DNA of 64,000 nucleotides. Source: Pecten maximus. Taxonomy: Eukaryota. The position numbers and the translations under genes were made by a program. The stretch is taken from NCBI RefSeq assembly GCF_902652985.1, contig NC_047031.1, positions 27,900,001 through 27,964,000 on the forward strand. Reading direction: 5' to 3'. The notes under the pieces are model-generated. The model ran no database searches. It had not been told where the DNA came from and was given only the letters and a program-made list of their open reading frames with translations. Position 1 is the first letter of the stretch, and every line of letters starts with the position of its first letter. Below, piece after piece: positions 6,701 through 57,967 of the stretch.

Positions 6701-9700
6701 GGGCAGTACGAATTTAGAAACCGATATATTTCTTTATAATTTCTTTATAATTCTCAGATAGCTCAGATGAGAACCATGGTTCTGGACCAATGAACTGCGA
6801 CATTACGTTGCCAAGGGGAAGGAAAATACTCTCAATGACTTATGACATATATAAGGTGGATTACAGTAACTTTTGAATACAACTATCTCATCCTCAACCA
6901 TAGTTGAACATGTCAGCATCTACTAATCTTATTTATCTTGTTTTTTAAATGAAGATCAGGATTATAATTGGACATCACAGTTCCTGTATCACCGCGTGTT
7001 TCGTCTCCTTACAACACAAACACTATCACTCCCTCCAAGATCTCACTGACAAGTCCTCACACATTCTCCATGTACCTGTTCGTCAACAGAATTATATCGA
7101 GTCCCACAGAACTCTATACTTACAAGTCCTTTATCATTTCAATCGTGTTAGCAGTACAATATCTCGCCTTTAAGTCGAAATCAGCTAAAACGAAATAAAT
7201 GTAAGTGTTACAGACAATCAAGGATATGAAAATACTTCTGTATTCAGTGGCAGAAAAAACTGCTGAATATGTCTCAACACTTTAGTACATTTAGTACAAA
7301 GGTAAACTATGTTTAGCACAAATAGTCATCTGATTATTTAAAAATAAAGTTTTATTATTTACTATACCAAAATATAGAACGTAAATACAATTATGTAGAA
7401 AACATGCCAAAATATTTGAATTGAGTAACGAACAAAAAAACAAGCATTACATTAATTGGCCCATGACCCTAATTGAATCTACTGACCCATAAACTCTGAC
7501 CCCAGTTGAATCGACATGGTGAGTATATCTGCAAGATCCACTTGACCAGCAGTCACCTCCTGACCGTTTGAGTAGAGGATCATCTTGGCCGTAGGTCGTA
7601 TCGTTATATTAACTCCCTCTTCGTCCACACCATCAACGCTGGATAAAAAAAAATGTCACGTGGTCATTTTCTAGAATGTGCGATATTTGTGTTAACCAAT
7701 TTCTCCCAGAATGCATTGCAGTTGTAATGAAGGGACCCGCAATGCGCTCTGGAAGAAATTGTGATTTATCTCTCCTTTAGATAGAAGACGAGGACGACAA
7801 TCCACGATTCTCCAGTGGGCCCACATTAAGTCGCCTTGTGCGATTACAATGCAGTGGTATACAGAAGGCCTTATTCCTGAATGTTATCTCCCTTTAGTAA
7901 ATTATCTGTCAAATTAATCACGGCACAAAATAGTTATAATGTTTTATTTGCCTACTTTTGTAAGACTTTTCAGTACAATAGTACCAACAAATTTACATTT
8001 TGTACGTATCACTGAATTTGTTTTTTATTAACATGTGTTAGTCATGCCTCTCTTAGTTTATTTAAACACAATAAGTCAGTAGTCAATATCCATTCATACA
8101 GCTGACGTTTTTTTGATTGACGTATATATACATATATATTTAGTGTAAAATCTGAACCGGCCCGGATTGATTATATATTTTAATCTAAATGGAGAAACCT
8201 ACTACACCAATTTCAATAAGTTAATAAGTTAACATGGTCTAACCTCGATAGAAACTTCGACTATTTCCCTCGATAAAACTCCCGATAACACCCACAACCT
8301 GACATACTGACATTTTACTGTACATATCAAGGTGTTTGTATTCTTCCTTAATAATATCATGGAATCTGCCTATCAACTTACAAAGTAAGATCACTTCCGC
8401 GTAGATCAATGGTGAACTCGAAAAGGCACTGAACCGGATATGATATGTCATTTCCGGTTTGATATTGAGGCTTCTTCTGTACGACCACTGTAAAGGCTTC
8501 GTACTGGAGAAACAAAAGCAGATCAACTTCAATCATTTTTAATTACAAATAAAAAAAAGAAGATCTCAATGATTTATATCCCGATTATATTAACTGTATA
8601 GATAGTGAAACGAAAATCTCTACCCCAATTACATGTACTATATATATGAAGTATTCCGGCAATCGCTACCCTGGTTATATGAATCATATAGACAGTATAC
8701 CGGAAATCCGGGTTATATGAACTAGATTAATAGTACACCGGAAATCGCTATCACGATAATATGAACTACATGTACAGGTACATGTAACTATGAACAACGG
8801 AAGAAGTTGCAATATCTTAACTCGTATCCGTTTAATTCTAATTTCGATTGAATCTCAAGATATTTAATATACAAATGTTGATTGTAAAATAAATAAATAA
8901 ACAAAAAATAGATCTCCACATTTGTATGTCCTTACCGGATCTATTCCACACGCGTCGAACATGAATTCGAACACAGTTGTGTTTGTGACCGTGTTCTGTT
9001 TACAGGCGGACCCGTGGCCTTGGATGTATATAATGCCGCCATTTGCCCCGCCCTCTAAGGTTAAGGTCAGCCGTGTCTCTGTACACATTTGCACTTTGAC
9101 TAAAACATATGTATTCAAAGCAAAACACATGTTAGATTTAGTTGGTAATAGAAAAAAACGTGTTGGATTTAAACGGAAATTACATAGCATATATACCAAT
9201 TAAAATGTACAGTTATACATACATGTACAGTGTTTGTGGGAAGATCTGAAAAACATGCAAAATACGTCTAAGATTTGTTTACCTAATAGAAAAAAATTAT
9301 ATCTTTTATAAATCAATACAGTTTGAGATTTGACCTTTGACCTAAGTGTAAACGAGTACAAGGGAGTATGCGGAGGAGTATGTGTTGACGTATGTTAACG
9401 AAATCAGAGAAACATCATCCTAGAATCCTTAAATTATATTGTCACATATTTGACCTTTAACCCATGAATGAGTTAGTTGGATGAGGTTGATTTGATTTAC
9501 ATTACAAGGAAACAAGTGTTACATAAAACAACAGGTCCGGAACATGTGAAACCAGCTCACGTGACAGCTGATGACTTTAATTATGATTGACAGCTCGTTA
9601 GCGGAACAACTTTGATGTCTATACAGGTATATATGATTAAGATATTGACGAGATATAGAGAATGATAATAATAGTAATACATATTTCATTTGTGGGTCAG

Positions 9701-11049: not shown

Positions 11050-12385
11050 CATATCGACTGTAGTATACACTGGTATACATTATTAAACATATCGACTGTA
11101 GTATACACTGGTATACATTATTAAACATATCGACTGTAGTATACACTGGTATACATTATTTAACATATCGACTGTAGTATACACTGGTATACATTATTTA
11201 ACATATCGACTGTAGTATACACTGGTATACATTATTAACATATCGACTGTAGTATACACTGGTATACATTATTAAACATATCGACTGTAGTATACAACTG
11301 GTATACATTATTAAACATATCGACTGTAGTATACACTGGTATACATTATTTAACATATCGACTGTAGTATACACTGGTATACATTATTTAACATATCGAC
11401 TGTAGTATACACTGGTATACATTATTTAACATATCGACTGTAGTATACACTGGTATACATTATTTAACATATCGACTGTAGTATACACTGGTATACATTA
11501 TTAAACATATCGACTGTAGTATACACTGGTATACATTATTAAACATATCGACTGTAGTATACACTGGTATACATTATTAAACATATCGACTGTAGTATAC
11601 ACTGGTATACATTATTTAACATATCGACTGTAGTATACACTGGTATACATTATTAACATATCGACTGTAGTATACACTGGTATACATTATTTAACATATC
11701 GACTGTAGTATACACTGGTATACATTATTTAACATATCGACTGTAGTATACACTGGTATACATTATTTAACATATCGACTGTAGTATACACTGGTATACA
11801 TTATTAAACATATCGACTGTAGTATACACTGGTGTACATTATTTAACATATCGACTGTAGTATACACTGGTATACATTATTTAACATATCGACTGTAGTA
11901 TACACTGGTGTACATTATTAAACATATCGACTGTAGTATACACTGGTATACATTATTAAACATATCGACTGTAGTATACACTGGTATACATTATTAAACA
12001 TATCGACTGTAGTATACACTGGTATACATTATTAAACATATCGACTGTAGTATACACTGGTATACATTATTAAACATATCGACTGTAGTATACACTGGTA
12101 TACATTATTTAACATATCGACTGTAGTATACACTGGTATACATTATTAAACATATCGACTGTAGTATACACTGGTATACATTATTAAACATATCGACTGT
12201 AGTATACACTGGTATACATTATTTAACATATCGACTGTAGTATACACTGGTATACATTATTTAACATATCGACTGTAGTATACACTGGTATACATTATTA
12301 AACATATCGACTGTAGTATACACTGGTATACATTATCAAACATATCGACTGTAGTATACACTGGTATACATTATTTAACATATCG
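11050..12385. repeat. Homogeneous 38-bp minisatellite, ~35 copies
   Basis: Unit catatcgactgtagtatacactggtatacattatt(a/t)aa repeated head-to-tail with very few variants. Confidence 0.98.
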
Positions 12386-12609
12386 TACTACATTATATAT
12401 CTAAATATATGTAATCTGAACATGAAGATTCAATTTAGGATGATTATTGGCACATTTTCAGAATATAAAAACATACATGTATTTATGAGTGGAAAATACA
12501 ACACATCTGCCAAACATAAAAAAACATGAAAACAATATAGACTTAATGCGCCTTTTCCAAATGATAATATTTGTGACGTCCCTTTTTATATCCCGACTTT
12601 CCCAGTAGT

Positions 12610-13140
12610 ACCACTGTCGAGGTCTAGAAGAAAAGACCCAGCTTTATGACGTCCCTAGCAACACTGACGAGTACTAGAGGGAAGAAACAGCCGTATGATG
12701 CCCATAACATCAATGATGAGTCATTGAATGATGAAAAAGAAGTACAATGATATACCTAGCATCACTAACGGATACAAGAAGAACGAAACAGGAGTATGAC
12801 GCCATTAATATCCCTGGCAAGTGTTAGAATTAAGAAACATTTATTTCGCCCTTAACATCACTGATGTGTCCTTGAAGAACGAAACAGACGTATGGTGTTC
12901 CTAACTTCACTAACGAGGTCTTGAATGAAGAAACGGTTGTGTTACGTCCTTAACATTGCTGAAGAGTCCTTGAATGACGAAACAGCTGTATGGTGTGCCT
13001 AACAAATCCACGATGAACACTAGAAGGGCGAAATAGCTGTTTGATGGCCATAACATCTGTGACGAGTCCTAGAAAGAGGAAAAGACGAAACAGCTGTATG
13101 GTGACCCTAAAATCCACAAGAGTCTTTAGAAGGTCGAAAT
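12610..13140 (+). ncRNA. Degenerate tandem array (~11 x ~49 bp) of minimal hammerhead ribozyme motifs
   Basis: Best unit 12953-12996: acattg CTGAAGA gtc cttgaat gac GAAA cagctg TA tggtgt. This gives stem I arms, CUGANGA core, stem II, GAAA, palindromic stem III and GUA triplet. Other units are mutated versions of the same consensus. Confidence 0.75.
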
Positions 13141-13347
13141 AACAGACAGAATTAGAAGAATAAAAAAAATACCTACATACACGGTGTCCTTTACAATGTT
13201 TAATACTGACTGTTGGAGTCGTGTGGACAGAGCACAAGGCACATGTCAACCTGGCTCGACCCATAGCTAACCTTGCTGTTACAATCAAACAGGTAAACTA
13301 ATAAACCCACTTGATCAGTAGCCCGGTCATTTGTTCTTAAATGCATT

Positions 13348-13820
13348 AACTAGAAAGGCCATGACAGCTACTGTCACGCCAGTGTTGCAGTGAGGTCAAC
13401 TTACGCACAGGTACCTGATAACTTGTTACAGTCTAAATGCATTAGGACCTTCCCTAGTGTGTATCGCAAACTTTTAGACATTTCGAAACGTCTGCAAAAT
13501 GTGATATACAAACTAGGAATGGTCGAAATACACGTATATTGCAACAAATTCTCAGTTTCTCGTGAACGTACGCGCATAAAGAACAGAGGTGATTGCTGAT
13601 AGTAGTAGTAGGGAACATTGTAGTAGTGTTGAGATACCAATGACCTTGACTTGTTTTCAAAGTCACGGGAATCAAATTTGTTAAATACTTCAATGATCTT
13701 CCTTTCGAGAGCCAAAATACCCATATGCCTGATATTTCGCCTGATGGTACTGTAACAAGGACAGAGCGCTGTTCAAATTCAACATGGAAATGACCTTGGC
13801 CTATTGTTAAGATCACGAGA
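13348..13820. mobile_element. Probable degenerate Helentron/HINE-type non-autonomous repeat
   Basis: Begins taactagaaaggcc and contains tgaccttgac / gaggtcaa / atgaccttgg motifs like those in the element at the window end. Confidence 0.3.
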
Positions 13821-19600: not shown

Positions 19601-21866
19601 ATAAAACTGAGTACGGGAAACCTGTATCCGGAGGCTTTGATACACCAAACACGTCGAAGTCATATCTAAGTAAGTCCGTTTTCCTGCTCCTGGTTTACTT
19701 CCATTTTCAATATTTGAAGTGAATACTAGGATTAGTAATGATTTCTGTAAAAATGCTTTATTTACTAAAATTTTAGAGAAATACCACATTTGGCGCGCCA
19801 AAGTTATTTTTCGGTATAAAGTGTGTATAGAATGTGACATTAGCGCAATGTTTTAAGCCCGTTAAAATAGACAAGATAAAACTGAAAACTATTGCCGTTA
19901 AGTTTGTGGTTTAAAATAAACAGCGACAAACATGCCATGTACATATGTAAAGGTCCTTACAAATGTATCAAGCCAAAGACTTCAGTAACATTTAGTTAAC
20001 GATATTATCATGCACAATGTGTGCGGTTAAATTTACGTTCTATGCGTAAATGTTTTAGCATTCTAAACGCTCTGCTATCATTCCGTGAAATTGAGATTGC
20101 TTTAGGTAGTTAATGCTGTTTCATAAAATAACATGTTGAGGGCGATTTCGGTTAGTCTGTATTTACAATATATCTTTTACGGTCAATAACCACACTCACC
20201 CTGTTTAAATATGCTTATAAAAGTGGAGTAATATTTTCAGGTATGAAACTTAAAGCTGCTGAAGATTTATTGAAGACATCTATGATAACTCTAACAGCAG
20301 CGAACGACATCATTAATACATTAGTAACTGGTGCCAGCGATCTGGATAATGTAAAAGGAACAACTACACCAGTGACTATGATAGGAAACGGCCATGAACC
20401 ATCCGGAGGGAGTCACCGAGATCATATTTCAGGGAATAGTCTGGGCGATAATTACAAACCTACAAACGGACTAAATGGAGCATTCTACTCAGATCATGAT
20501 CCGAACACTGAAACGAAAATAGACAAGACTTCAACTGGATCTCGTCGAACAGGAAGTATAGTAGACAATAGAGACTTAACGCCATTTGAGAGTATATTTG
20601 GAGAGATTGTTCCAGTACCGGAACGCGGTCAGATTCAGACCCCTATAACCAAAAGACATCTCGGTGAAAAGGACTTTGTGAAGTCGGGTAAAAATTCCTT
20701 ACAACCAAACACCAAGGACAAAGACATATTTTCTCATCCCGTGGACTTTCCTCACCAAGCGGAGCCATATCCACATCTAACAGGAAACGGTAAATCGCCG
20801 GGTATGATGCCACCTCCACCACCAATTGACATGCGTGCTTTTCCAGGGTCGATGATGTCACAGTTTGAATCACCTGTACCCCCGCAACATTCAAGTATGC
20901 GCTAATATTTGTTTTAACAATCACTTAATGAGCGATTCGGCTAAAAAATCCAGCACTATAAAATGACTAAATTTTCGTACTCATTATTCTGCTCTAAAGA
21001 CTTTATTTTCTAATGACTCTGCGCATCTTTTTTTCTAGAGGATTCTACTAATCCCGAAAAATCCATTTTTTTTACAAATAAATTTACAGGGAACTGGAAC
21101 TTCATGAACAAAATATATTATCCAATAAAATCAGGGAAAACATTTAACATTAAATGTTTAACAGTAATGTAAAGCCCTGTTGGGCATAATATGATCACGT
21201 CAAGATTTCGCCCTCTTCAACACTCTAATCATATTTTTTTTATATACATTGTCTGGTAATTGTACATGTATATGATGTTTTAAGTGCCGATGGGAGGACC
21301 AAACCCGGGCTTCAATCCAGGACAATTCGCCGGCGGGCCAGGACCTGCACTAAATCGGGGATTTATGTCTCAAGGAGGTCCTAGAGGTTTCATGACCGGG
21401 TAAGTTCGATATAAGGATAGTTCATGCCAGCACCACATTTCAAAAACTGTTACTAGTATCCTTATATCCCGAAACAACAGCAGATTTGGACTTAACTCGT
21501 GTTTTGTAGTTAAGTCTTTTCGTAATGCAAAGTTATCTGCTTTTGTTAGCAGATATTGATTCCTACGTCATTAATTTGTGAGAGTAACGTCATGGATATT
21601 GTTAGAAAATTATGTAATTTTGCACGCAAACTAATGACGTAACAATCAACCCCTGCTGACAAGAGCAGATTATACTGCACTTGGAAAAGACGTGATATAT
21701 AGGTGTATATAGTTATAAAAAAAGTATGACTCGGGTAGTATATTACGGACTCAATCGGTCAGGTTGGATTAATGAAATATTACAAGAAAATGTTGGCCTT
21801 AATATCATTTGAAAAGAAAAAGATTCGTAATAACTAAATACATGTTTGTATTATTTTTGTAGATGA
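16653..21866 (+). CDS. Uncharacterised low-complexity, probably secreted protein (~445 aa) with Pro/Met/Gly-rich C-terminus; first exon uncertain
   Basis: Phase-consistent exons: 16775 (or 16782)-16816, 16921-16968, 18153-18308, 18672-18800, 19110-19196, 19601-19669, 20241-20894, 21285-21399, 21863-21866 (TGA). Candidate first exon 16653-16693 spliced to 16782 gives MTEWFYVNTVVIPFVSAVAVV. C-terminus GMMPPPPPIDM...MPMGGPNPGFNPGQFAGGPGPALNRGFMSQGGPRGFMTG. AATAAA at ~22150. Confidence 0.75.
17000..17295 (+). mobile_element. Degenerate tRNA-derived SINE
   Basis: A-box-like agctaagtcgg and B-box-like ggtttgacgc. The 3' end aatgactttggctgttcaatgggcga resembles the 3' end of the 6175-6706 element. 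Confidence 0.55.
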
Positions 21867-42955: not shown

Positions 42956-45900
42956 TCAACTCCAAATGTCTTCATACCACGACGACTTGCCATTTTCTGA
43001 AATGATAAAGTCATAATTGTTACACTTCCCTAAATTCGTCTGTTAGTGTTACTTTGTTTTACCTGCATGCTATCTCGTTACTAAATTATCTGATCTCCAT
43101 ATGTTTGAATATTTGATAGATGAAGCCATGTGTATGTACTTGTCCCAAATGTAAGATTTTTACAGAAAGTTGCAATCTTGTGGAATGAAAGCATGTATTA
43201 TGGAAATTATGAAGATTTTAGAGATGTCATTTTTGATTGCATTGAACGAAAAGACGATTCAAAAGATTCAAAATAAGGCATAAACAATTCAAAATAAGGC
43301 CATATTTAAAAATGAAATATAGCCGGTAATAGTTATCATGATCAATTGAACACAAGCATGGATTATTGTATATCTTGTTGTAAAGTAATTCTCAAAGTAG
43401 TGTATCTTGTTAATTCATTGGGGGAAAATGAATTTAGAAAGTCTTAGTCCGTCTCTGCTTGGGCTACTGAATTTTCGATATAATAAGTGATAATTTCATG
43501 ACAATATTATTTTCATTATTTATTAATTTGTCAATTATTTATAAGTTCTATAGTTTGTCTGGTGCTTAATCCCTTTTTGTCACAAGGTATGTATAAACTG
43601 TATCGGCTAAAATCTTTAATTGCATGTACACATGACAAACTTACCGCAGATACAGATGGTACATCCAGCCTCATCAAATCCGACACACTGGCTCGGACAG
43701 TCGCTAGGATTGGAACGACATCCGGTTTGTTCTGAATGGAAACCGGAAGTAAATATCACTTAACAACGACAATTACTATCTTTATTGTCAGTCAACAGTT
43801 ACATACACATGCATTGTACGTGTCTATCCGTTGTTTCGTGTATGACATACATTCATTATGCAGTTTTCGTTTTCCCCGTGTTGTTCCCTCAAATGAATTG
43901 TACTTTAAATACAAACTGGCAAGCTATACCGATGTACCTCGTCGGGAATAACCGGAGAATGAACGGCTGGCTGAATTGGCTATCTCTGACATGCCTTTAA
44001 ATGTTCGTACAACCAGTTACCTTTTCTCCCAAAAAAATGATTGCACAGTCCGTTTGGTAATTAAATTTTAATAGGGGAGTTGACATAATATGATATTAAG
44101 TCATATAATAATTAATAACCTGTTTTGTCGGTACTTACTGGTATCGGATTCGCCATTGCTACTTTGTTCATGCGTTGTTACGTGGGGTTGTTTGCTGTCA
44201 CCATCTAATGATATAAATACATGTACAGTGATATTGTTCAAAAGAAGGCACACATAGGGTTTTAAAATAAGATATGCGAAATAAAAAGAGAATCTACTCT
44301 GTAAGTAATATCCAGAAGGTAACTATATCAAACAAATACCATTACGTTTATGAAAAGGAAGCTATTTGGAATCATAACAATAGCGTATGGAATTTACTTG
44401 TACTGGTGCAGGTTGTATACAAGCTGATGTATGGAAGAGAAGTATAAAAGTAAAACTGAATCATTAATATTTGAATATATGGAAGGATCCTCGGGTTTCT
44501 CAACGCTGACCTTCTTTCCTCTATTATTCGAGCTGAGAGAAGAAACAAGAACAATAATTAAGACAGGTGTTTGTACACTTACTACAGGTACAGACAGGTA
44601 ATGTTTGTACACTTACTACAGATACAGACAGGTATTGTTTGTACACTTACTACAGATACAGATAGGTATTGTTTGTATACTTACTACAGGTACAGACAGG
44701 ACACAGATTGTTGGGGTCGATGGTTATACATCTGTGACGACATCGTGTCCAGGTTACCTAACAAACACCAGTGTCTTGGTCATCACCTGTAGTCGTGGCT
44801 GTTCCTATCGACAATAAACCATCTAGATAAATAAACCGATGAATTATAGATATTTTATCGTCATTTTACCATGATCACAATTAGATTAAACACTAATAAA
44901 GCATAACATATTTGTGTAGACACAAGGGATATACAGTGATATTTTCTTTGTACTCTACTGTGTCAAAACTCTAGGTATTTTGTACATCTTATAACTATGT
45001 ATTATAGTATTTTGGAATGTATCATCGGTTGAGATTGTTGCATAGATTCTTTGATACGGGAGGCGCTCGAAATGCAATCAGGACTATCTGTCGAATAAAG
45101 GTAAAGAGGAAACTATTCAACAATACTTTTTAGTGGCTATGTGAAATATTGTCCTCGTAGTCTATTTTATTGAAATTAATTAACGTATTTAAATGTACGC
45201 TTTTACTTGAAGGGATATGTTGTGTCTCCCCTCTTACACCAGATATTCCATCAGATCTCCCTCCTGATCCTCCAGAGATTCCATGTGACATTCCTAAGGA
45301 CCCTGGAAATTCCCATAGCTCAGATTGTACCTCGGGTCTTTCACCTAAAGAATACACACATGGAACTATTTCTACATAGAATAGCCTTATGTCATATATA
45401 GCCATAAATGATATATATGTATAATTGTCTCGTTTAATAGCGATTTACATCCTATCTATACAAAAAAAAAAGAATTACAAGACAGCGAATTTTGTGTTGC
45501 AAATTTAACAACCGTTTTAGTTTAAATTGTTGCGTACCTAACTGAACTGTCATGTCGCAAGGCAATCGCAATGGCTGCGGTATTTCTTACAACGGTAGAG
45601 TCAATCAGGGGGCAGATATTCTAATGACTTGGGTATGTCATACTAAGGGTCGGATACTTTCGTGAGTTAGAGTAAGGATTATGAAATTATAAACACGTTT
45701 CAAAACAAATTGAGAGTTACAGTAGAGCCACCACTGAATAAATCATGCTTCTGTATCTTCAGCTAAAGGCAAAACGTGAGACGGTGCCAATGGAGATATT
45801 AGGAAGAAGAAAGCTGTTAAAGATAATTCTGAATTTAGCCGCCTCTTACGATCATGCGATTTAAGCTGCAGGTATAATTCTTACGCCTAATTGAATATTT

Positions 45901-49097: not shown

Positions 49098-57967
<8,870 letters not shown>

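What the first reader, a model, noticed from the sequence alone, without database searches (positions are those of the whole stretch)
12610..13140. Second, more diverged hammerhead array 42 kb away on the opposite strand implies a mobile family
Seen: ~11 more diverged units of the same 49-bp consensus on +, between the divergently oriented ZP gene and the low-complexity gene. At least one unit (12953-12996) keeps an intact core with stem I acattg/tggtgt and stem II gtc/gac; predicted cleavage is after A12990. Both arrays have ~10 units and an AATAAA shortly downstream on the ribozyme strand (13159; 54679-54684), which is weak evidence in AT-rich DNA. Inference: similar-sized arrays at separate sites and in opposite orientation fit insertion of multimeric cDNA from rolling-circle reverse transcription of a small circular RNA better than local slippage.
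Basis: partly seen in the sequence, partly recalled or inferred. Interest (0 to 1): 0.8.

Follow-up and report, generated by a model that had tools for sequence, protein, structure and literature searches.

The report
Decayed hammerhead-ribozyme minisatellite copy
This stretch is a worn-out copy of a 49-base tandem repeat, common in this scallop-sized genome, whose unit is a self-cutting "hammerhead" RNA motif; it is the multiplied ribozyme segment of an older ~390-base mobile repeat and looks like ordinary DNA-level repeat growth, not a new 49-base RNA replicon.

Summary
12601-13160 (+) carries about 11 decayed 49-bp units, 63-84% identical to the family consensus against 53% for shuffled units. 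Only one unit (12949-12997) keeps an intact hammerhead core, with predicted cleavage after A12990.

The family is dispersed: a 3-unit query gave 636 candidate places on at least 15 large contigs. The rolling-circle cDNA reading is not supported:
- Array length ranges from 1 to at least 49 units, and 1 is the commonest.
- Arrays usually sit between a conserved head and tail that belong to a ~390-bp retrozyme-like monomer. Array B at 54.7-55.2 kb has both; array A has neither left.
- Nine of 26 arrays have a consensus with a dead core (G12 mutated), and six have no intact unit.
- Within arrays the core mutates as fast as the rest, and there is no excess of compensatory stem changes.
- Higher-order repeats containing truncated units exist, and a ribozyme-free piece of the tail is also amplified at one locus.
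- Units are about 6% from their array consensus, while the neighbouring tails are about 21% from theirs.

A and B share no flanks, so this is not a segmental duplication. All sequencing runs were assembled contigs, so transcription could not be tested. This scan has already reported the same family on other DNA of this genome at least nine times.

The parts
12601..13160 (+). Array A: about 11 decayed 49-bp hammerhead units (A1-A11). Neither the head nor the tail module can be detected beside it.
   Evidence: Head and tail HMMs find nothing in 12450-12660 or 13100-13400.
12949..12997 (+). Unit A8, the only unit of array A with an intact catalytic core and the G10.1-C11.1 pair. The hammerhead spans 12953-12996 and the predicted cleavage is 3' of A12990.
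   Evidence: Rfam RF00163 gives 23.8 bits, E 0.003, below the gathering score of 34. Core check. The minimum-energy fold of the isolated unit is not the hammerhead fold (z -0.63).
54690..55179 (-). Array B: 10 units of the same family, mean 0.87 identity to the consensus. Three units have an intact core (B4, B7, B10).
55176..55298 (-). Head module (H) of the parent element, directly upstream of array B.
   Evidence: nhmmer with the head HMM, E 2.5e-13. Alignments.
54602..54691 (-). Tail module (T) of the parent element, directly downstream of array B. It contains the AATAAA at 54684-54679, which is a private variant of this copy.
   Evidence: nhmmer with the tail HMM, E 1.7e-18. A genome search with this stretch found 6 other loci.
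45657..45742 (-). A third relic of the same parent element in the window: a tail module with no recognisable unit upstream.
   Evidence: nhmmer with the tail HMM, E 3.9e-9. Sequence shown.

Best explanation
Array A is an old, neutrally decaying copy of a genome-wide minisatellite. Its 49-bp unit is one canonical metazoan type I hammerhead: helix I 6 bp, helix II 4 bp, helix III 2 bp capped by the palindromic loop AGCU.

The unit is the ribozyme segment (U) of a ~390-bp retrozyme-like repeat with the module order T-X-H-U. That repeat spread through the genome long ago, presumably by way of RNA. Most copies are fragments of the form H-U-T with a single U.

In a minority of copies the U segment was multiplied in place into arrays of 7 to about 50 units. 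The likely processes are DNA-level tandem duplication: replication slippage, unequal exchange, and duplication of multi-unit blocks. This growth did not depend on ribozyme activity.

Array A has since diverged so far (units about 26% from consensus) that its head and tail can no longer be recognised. Only one unit could still form a catalytic core. It most likely has no function today.

Shown here: the anatomy, the family distribution, the embedding in H and T, the amplification of dead cores, and the lack of selection on the core and stems. Inferred: RNA-mediated spread of the parent element and the DNA-level mode of array growth.
For: - Dispersed family: 3 units of B gave 636 candidates and 155 scored matches on 15 chromosome-scale contigs plus unplaced ones.
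- Arrays are bracketed by a conserved head and tail.
- A single-unit copy used as query gave 133 candidates. About 20 of the 30 loci fetched have H-U(1)-T and the others have 7-21 units.
- The tail runs on into X and then H: L064 1515-1965 reads T-X-H-U-T with a period of 391 bp, and L056 is alike. A genome search with that stretch gave 608 candidates, with T+X contiguous in many and several tandem pairs 290-410 bp apart.
- The array consensus carries a mutated G12 in 9 of 26 arrays, and 6 arrays of 10-21 units have no intact core.
- Substitution rate against the array consensus is 0.061 in the core and 0.062 outside it. Without CpG sites it is 0.049 against 0.060, Mann-Whitney p 0.6.
- Compensatory double changes in the stems: 16 observed, 17.0 expected from shuffling.
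- L043 is an 88-bp higher-order repeat (a 49-bp unit plus a 39-bp truncated unit), 5 copies at 98%.
- In L035 a 41-bp ribozyme-free piece of the tail is repeated 8.5 times.
- Tails next to arrays do not form a subfamily (277 of 500 permutations reach the observed statistic). They lie 21% from the tail consensus, while units lie about 6% from their array consensus.
- Single-copy U segments average 0.71 identity to the consensus with gaps counted as mismatches; 4 of 20 keep an intact core.
- A and B share no flanks.
- The helix sizes and the palindromic loop III match the canonical metazoan type I hammerhead described in PMC4209133. Mussel retrozyme monomers of 350-390 bp are reported in PMC7229834.
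Against: - Array A itself has no detectable head or tail. Its origin inside an H-U-T copy is therefore inferred from the family, not shown at this locus.
- Array consensus sequences at different loci are 87-100% identical to one another's consensus. That also fits arrays formed before or at insertion. My sample of arrays was gathered by similarity to array B, which biases it towards consensus-like arrays.
- No target-site duplications or exact element ends were resolved.
- There are no usable RNA data. All runs were assembled contigs and the runs labelled 'RNA?' are ambiguous.
- Adjacent units in A are no more alike than distant ones (0.70 against 0.71), so A carries no direct signature of block duplication.
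Confidence: 0.78

Rival explanations
1. One reading: a 49-nt self-cleaved RNA is circularised, copied by rolling-circle reverse transcription, and the multimeric cDNA is inserted at new sites. That would explain arrays of similar size at separate loci.
For: - The family is dispersed.
- The unit is a complete hammerhead, and adjacent units can form an 8-bp helix III through the palindrome ACAGCUGU. Rfam Hammerhead_3-type hits span two units.
- Array A has no head or tail.
- A 2026 preprint lists retrozyme family consensus lengths down to 51 bp (10.64898/2026.07.22.740005).
Against: - Most arrays lie between head and tail in fixed order and orientation.
- The single-unit form is the commonest, and array sizes span 1 to at least 49.
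- Arrays of dead-core units, and of 88-bp blocks that include a truncated unit, exist.
- There is no core conservation or stem covariation.
- Units are younger than their flanks.
- The two AATAAA motifs are not a family feature.
Confidence: 0.06
2. Arrays were formed once, or a few times, in a master copy of the parent element. They were then spread by retrotransposition as H-U(n)-T, with later gain and loss of units. On this view array A was inherited as an array and did not grow at this site.
For: - The array consensus is nearly the same at all loci (0.87-1.00 to the global consensus).
- Head and tail flank arrays in the same way at many loci.
Against: - Tails beside arrays do not cluster apart from tails of single-unit copies.
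- Tails are about three times more diverged than the units next to them.
- Array-private fixed variants and higher-order repeats point to local turnover.
- Resolution is limited: the tail is only about 85 bp.
Confidence: 0.13
3. The array is a functional RNA-processing or regulatory element in the intergenic region between the ZP-like gene and the low-complexity gene. It would cut read-through transcripts.
For: - One unit has an intact core.
- The array lies between what seem to be divergent genes: a weak ZP-N hit in the ORF at 8864-9199 (-), E 0.027, and an ORF at 20243-20905 (+).
Against: - Ten of 11 units are dead, and the surviving unit has a weak stem I with three G-U pairs.
- The surviving unit's neighbours cannot supply the dimer partner in the adjacent-unit fold.
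- The fold of the surviving unit is no more stable than shuffled sequence.
- The family decays neutrally.
- There is no evidence of transcription.
Confidence: 0.03

Closest known systems
Metazoan non-LTR retrozymes (Cervera and de la Pena 2020, PMC7229834), e.g. the 350-390-bp repeats of the mussel Mytilus galloprovincialis
   Same: - A type I hammerhead with a short helix III and a palindromic loop.
- AT-rich tandem-capable monomer of about 390 bp (T-X-H-U).
- Hundreds to thousands of dispersed, mostly fragmentary copies in a bivalve genome.
   Different: Here the ribozyme segment alone has been multiplied into 49-bp arrays inside copies of the element. The published monomers are 150-450 bp and repeat as whole units. 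circRNA expression was not tested here.
Short non-LTR retrozyme families in vertebrates (bioRxiv 10.64898/2026.07.22.740005): consensus lengths of 51-972 bp, with monomer, dimer and multimer copies
   Same: Tandem hammerhead-bearing repeats whose unit can be about as short as the ribozyme itself, with dispersed monomers and localised multimers.
   Different: The taxon differs. The preprint does not describe the short families as internal expansions of a longer element. Its proposed link to Penelope-like elements was not tested here.
Hammerhead-bearing satellite DNAs (newt satellite 2, Schistosoma Sm-alpha, Dolichopoda pDo500; PMC2837043, PMC4209133)
   Same: Tandem DNA repeats that each encode a type I hammerhead working as a dimer through an extended helix III.
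   Different: Those monomers are 300-500 bp with much non-ribozyme sequence. In pDo500 the ribozyme region is reported to be conserved. Here the unit is nothing but the ribozyme, and it shows no conservation of the core within arrays.
Ordinary minisatellites that arise inside transposable elements
   Same: - Unit of 10-100 bp and copy number varying widely between loci.
- Array-private variants and higher-order repeats.
- Another segment of the same element is also amplified (41-bp tail piece, L035).
   Different: The amplified segment happens to be a complete catalytic RNA motif.

Membership tests
Hammerhead ribozyme, type I (Rfam RF00163) | Conserved core C3 U4 G5 A6 N7 G8 A9 ... G12 A13 A14 ... 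A15.1-U16.1, a non-G residue at position 17, and the G10.1-C11.1 pair | tested here: met
   Met in unit A8 only (12953-12996). A2 has A at 11.1, A6 has U at position 9, A10 has G at position 3, and the remaining units have several core changes.
Hammerhead ribozyme, type I (Rfam RF00163) | Score at or above the curated gathering threshold of 34 bits | tested here: not met
   The best score in array A is 23.8 bits. The best in array B is 30.6 bits, from a match spanning two units. A gathering-threshold scan of the whole window found nothing.
Hammerhead ribozyme, type I (Rfam RF00163) | Three helices around the core, supported by folding or covariation | tested here: inconclusive
   - Helices I (6 bp), II (3-4 bp) and III (2 bp plus the AGCU loop) can be drawn.
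- The minimum-energy fold of A8 is a different structure, z -0.63.
- Across 565 units there are 16 compensatory double changes against 17.0 expected.
Hammerhead ribozyme, type I (Rfam RF00163) | Self-cleavage at the predicted site | not testable with these tools
   This needs in vitro transcription of A8 as a monomer and as a dimer, or raw RNA reads. Only assembled contigs were on offer.
Metazoan non-LTR retrozyme | [quoted passage not shown] | tested here: met
   Met for the parent element: T-X-H-U with a period of 391 bp in L064, the same layout in L056, and tandem pairs 290-410 bp apart. Not met for the 49-bp array itself, whose period lies outside the published range in PMC7229834. The 2026 preprint does list families of 51 bp.
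Metazoan non-LTR retrozyme | Low GC content (<50%) and no LTR, PBS or PPT | tested here: met
   The units have GC 0.42-0.51 according to cmscan. No terminal repeats were seen around H-U-T copies.
Metazoan non-LTR retrozyme | Expression as linear and circular monomer RNAs | not testable with these tools
   No run on record as RNA holds the stretch, and all runs are contigs.
Metazoan non-LTR retrozyme | Sequence relation to the pLTR of an autonomous Penelope-like element | not tested
No reverse-transcriptase-bearing neighbour recurs in the 1.5-kb flanks of about 50 loci.
Minisatellite | Head-to-tail unit of 10-100 bp, copy number varying between loci, array-private variants | tested here: met

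The most novel reading that the evidence does not exclude
Transcripts of intact 49-bp arrays elsewhere in the genome are cut into 49-nt hammerhead monomers that circularise and act as the smallest known retrozyme or viroid-like RNA circles. Array A would then be a fossil insertion of such a circle's rolling-circle cDNA, which would explain why it has no head or tail.
Probability: 0.05. Interest if true: 0.85.

Novelty: new member of a known kind. Interest (0 to 1): 0.3.

Why it matters
A tandem repeat whose whole unit is a hammerhead ribozyme is a compact curiosity. It gives a natural series of intact and dead multimeric ribozymes for testing how adjacent units cooperate. I found no paper describing it in scallops.

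This particular locus adds little. It is one decayed copy among hundreds, it shows no sign of function, and the evidence points to ordinary DNA-level minisatellite growth inside an already known kind of retroelement. Its main value is as a negative result against the idea of a 49-nt replicating RNA element.

Tried and rejected
- Segmental duplication of A and B: rejected. blastn with 1.5-kb flanks finds similarity only inside the arrays.
- Head or tail relics beside array A: none found. The nhmmer head and tail HMMs give no hit at all on 12450-12660 or 13100-13400.
- AATAAA as a shared polyadenylation signal: rejected. In B it is a private variant of the tail consensus, and in A it lies in an A-run.
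- A larger recurrent neighbour, such as a reverse-transcriptase ORF, next to the element: none. An all-against-all comparison of masked flanks from about 50 loci found only unrelated repeats and one segmental duplication, L044/L052.
- Array-bearing copies as a distinct tail subfamily: not seen.
- Block-duplication signature within A: adjacent units are no more alike than distant ones. The loop II variant TTGAAT is shared by A3, A7 and A8, with TTGAAG in A6, which is suggestive only.
- RNA evidence: all 24 runs are Logan contigs. The 'RNA?' runs X6 and X7 give low-depth pieces over both the array and its flanks, which cannot be told from DNA. The depth peak at 12936-13002 is cross-mapping from the family at 90% likeness.
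- Unit-number or empty-site alleles: no contig spans the array. DNA runs from other samples (X3, X5) cover it piecewise and collinearly, with only 1-8-bp indels. The listed 'skips' have sides of only 20-26 letters and look like family cross-mapping.
- Target-site duplications and exact ends of the parent element: not resolved from the alignment of nine copies.
- Genome search with the upstream flank of array B: it found only itself, being too diverged.

Full report
**What is there.** The window is G000:C17:27900001-27964000 of a 918-Mb assembly in 3,983 contigs. Earlier notes of this scan call it the king scallop, and from memory the assembly size fits. I did not verify the species.

Between 12601 and 13160 on the + strand I count 11 head-to-tail units of 47-57 bp. 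A profile HMM built from the better-preserved array at 54690-55179 (- strand) finds nine of them at E<1. A5 and A11 fall below that. Their identity to the family consensus CCCTAACATCACTGACGAGTCCTAGAAGGACGAAACAGCTGTATGATGT is 0.63-0.84, mean 0.74. Shuffled units and random 49-mers of the window give 0.53 +/- 0.05. blastn aligns the two arrays over their whole length at 66-72% identity and finds nothing in 1.5 kb of flank on either side. The array is therefore real, and it is not part of a segmental duplication.

**The ribozyme motif.** The consensus unit is a canonical metazoan type I hammerhead:
- helix I, 6 bp (ACAUCA/UGAUGU);
- core CUGACGA;
- helix II, 4 bp with loop UAGAA;
- GAAA;
- helix III of two pairs closed by the palindromic loop AGCU;
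- A at position 17.

This is the architecture described for animal hammerheads that act as dimers in tandem repeats (PMC4209133). Because ACAGCUGU is self-complementary, neighbouring units can form an 8-bp helix III. That is why Rfam's type III model also hits across unit borders.

No unit in the window reaches Rfam's gathering score. In E-value mode, 12953-12996 scores 23.8 bits for Hammerhead_1 (E 0.003), 12855-12898 scores 21.5 bits, and 13034-13096 scores 22.5 bits for Hammerhead_3. Checked base by base, only A8 (12949-12997) has every core nucleotide plus the G10.1-C11.1 pair. A2 has A at 11.1, A6 has U at position 9, and A10 has G at position 3. A8 has three G-U pairs in helix I. Its minimum-energy fold is not the hammerhead fold and is no more stable than shuffles (z -0.63). 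Its neighbour A9 has no CUGA core and A7's helix III strand pairs poorly with A8's, so neither adjacent-unit (type III) fold is available.

**The family.** Three units of array B used as query gave 636 first-look candidates and 155 scored matches on 15 chromosome-scale contigs and some unplaced ones, at 76-90% identity. In 26 arrays for which I had sequence, the unit number was 7, 9, 10, 10, 11, 13, 13, 13, 15, 17, 17, 18, 18, 19, 20, 21, 24, 27, 28, 33, 34, 36, and 43, 47 and 49 or more where the locus ended inside the array. That both arrays of this window have about ten units is therefore coincidence.

**Arrays sit inside a larger element.**
- Aligning the flanks of arrays shows two conserved modules. 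The head, about 75-120 bp, reads ...CCATCCAGATTTTGACATTTCTTT..GACCTATTTGAGTTT..TAGGCCCTTA. The tail, about 85 bp, reads CAGTTTAATTCATTTTGGCTCTACTGTATCTAACTCTCAATTTGTTTTGAAAGGTGCTAATATC..GTGTCTTTTGT.
- Array B has both: head at 55298-55176, E 2.5e-13, and tail at 54691-54602, E 1.7e-18.
- A search with the tail found copies with one, two or no units.
- A single-unit copy used as query gave 133 candidates. About 20 of the 30 loci fetched are head - one unit - tail, and the rest carry 7-21 units.
- In L064 and L056 the tail continues through about 170 bp (X) into the head. L064 1515-1965 reads T-X-H-U-T with a period of 391 bp.
- A genome search with that stretch gave 608 candidates. T and X are contiguous in many of them, and several pairs of hits lie 290-410 bp apart in tandem.

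The parent is thus a tandem-capable monomer of about 390 bp with one hammerhead. That is the format of animal non-LTR retrozymes, including the 350-390-bp repeats of mussels (PMC7229834). Earlier notes of this scan reached the same conclusion on other windows, and I have re-derived it here independently. The masked flanks of about 50 loci share nothing else, so no larger element surrounds it.

**How the arrays grew.** Six results argue for DNA-level tandem duplication that does not depend on ribozyme activity.
1. The consensus of 9 of 26 arrays has the general base G12 mutated (GACAAAAC, GACTAAAC or GACCAAAC). Six arrays of 10-21 units have no intact core at all, so dead units were amplified. 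Overall, 37% of 565 units keep the core.
2. Against each array's own consensus, core positions change as often as the rest: 0.061 against 0.062. Without CpG sites the figures are 0.049 against 0.060, p 0.6.
3. Compensatory double changes in the helices number 16, against 17.0 expected from shuffling, and pair-breaking single changes are common.
4. L043 is five copies, 98% alike, of an 88-bp block made of one 49-bp unit and one 39-bp truncated unit.
5. In L035 a 41-bp piece of the tail, with no ribozyme in it, is repeated 8.5 times. The element is therefore prone to minisatellite formation in general.
6. Units lie about 6% from their array consensus. The tails beside arrays lie 21% from the tail consensus, and single-copy units are about as decayed as the tails. 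Tails beside arrays do not form a subfamily.

A static multimeric cDNA inserted together with its flanks would be as old as those flanks. A cDNA of a 49-nt circle would have no head or tail.

**Caveats.**
- My arrays were found by similarity to array B, which favours consensus-like arrays.
- The tail consensus may overstate the age of the tails.
- The near-identity of array consensus sequences between loci would also fit arrays that arose early, or in a master copy. I keep that as a rival at 0.13.

**Array A in this frame.** Its units are 26% from the consensus, against 13% for B, and about 29% from each other. At that age a head or tail would be hard to recognise, and none is found. Directly upstream lies an unrelated, very homogeneous 38-bp satellite (11050-12385, 35 copies, 98%), which may have displaced older sequence. 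The loop II variant TTGAAT occurs in A3, A7 and A8, with TTGAAG in A6. The others have TAGAAG-like loops. That is easier to explain by local duplication than by copying a single circle, but the sample is small and adjacent units are not measurably more alike. The two AATAAA motifs are not a family feature: in B the motif is a private change in the tail's TTTAATTCAT.

**Surroundings.** The ORF at 8864-9199 (-) has a weak ZP-N match (E 0.027, below Pfam's cut-off). The ORF at 20243-20905 (+) has no Pfam match.

**Reads.** All 24 runs offered are assembled contigs. DNA runs from two other samples cover array A piecewise and collinearly, with single-base differences and 1-8-bp indels. No contig spans the whole array, so unit-number polymorphism and empty-site alleles remain open. 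Two runs guessed to be RNA give low-depth pieces over both array and flanks and prove nothing about transcription. The very high depth over 12936-13002 is cross-mapping from the family onto the best-preserved unit.

**Comparison and novelty.** The hammerhead is canonical, and the parent element fits the non-LTR retrozyme format. Expression was not tested, and neither was a link to Penelope-like elements. A ribozyme-only 49-bp repeat lies below the 150-450-bp range given in PMC7229834. However, a 2026 preprint lists retrozyme families with consensus lengths down to 51 bp (10.64898/2026.07.22.740005). I found no paper on such repeats in scallops. This scan has already reported the same family on other DNA of this genome at least nine times. 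The present locus is one of its most decayed members.

**Verdict.** A mobile family is supported. Rolling-circle cDNA of a small circle is not supported. Interest is low to moderate.

Noticed in passing
window 11050-12385: A very homogeneous 38-bp satellite (35.2 copies, 98% matches, unit CATATCGACTGTAGTATACACTGGTATACATTATTAAA) ends about 220 bp upstream of array A. It is unrelated to the hammerhead unit.
   Followed up: no
window 45657-45742 (-): A third relic of the parent element in this window: a tail module (E 3.9e-9) with no recognisable hammerhead unit upstream.
   Followed up: partly
L035:1559-1916 (G000:C12, about 11.97 Mb): A 41-bp piece of the tail module, containing no ribozyme, is itself tandemly repeated 8.5 times at 91% matches. 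There is also an 88-bp higher-order period.
   Followed up: partly
L043:1079-1519 (G000:C11, about 11.46 Mb): An 88-bp higher-order repeat made of one 49-bp unit and one 39-bp truncated unit, 5 copies at 98%. All units have dead cores (GACAAAAC, ACGTG).
   Followed up: partly
G000:C6:8728841-8750286: Five 83%-identical matches to the tail module at a regular spacing of about 4.3 kb, suggesting a tandem repeat of a much larger unit that contains a copy of the element.
   Followed up: no
L044 vs L052 (G000:C3, 39.73 and 39.66 Mb): About 2.5 kb including a single-unit copy of the element is duplicated at 92-97.5% identity, about 70 kb apart. This is a segmental duplication.
   Followed up: no
window 51659-53596 and 1-608: Two further large minisatellites: a 33-bp unit repeated about 62 times (80% matches), 1.1 kb from array B, and a 38/122-bp repeat at the start of the window.
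   Followed up: no
window 8864-9199 (-): This ORF has a weak ZP-N match (PF23344, E 0.027, below the cut-off).
   Followed up: partly
window 12600-12861 in run X5: Two contigs cover the same part of array A, one with 1 difference and one with 18 differences in 261 bp. This is either a strongly divergent allele or a paralogous copy.
   Followed up: no
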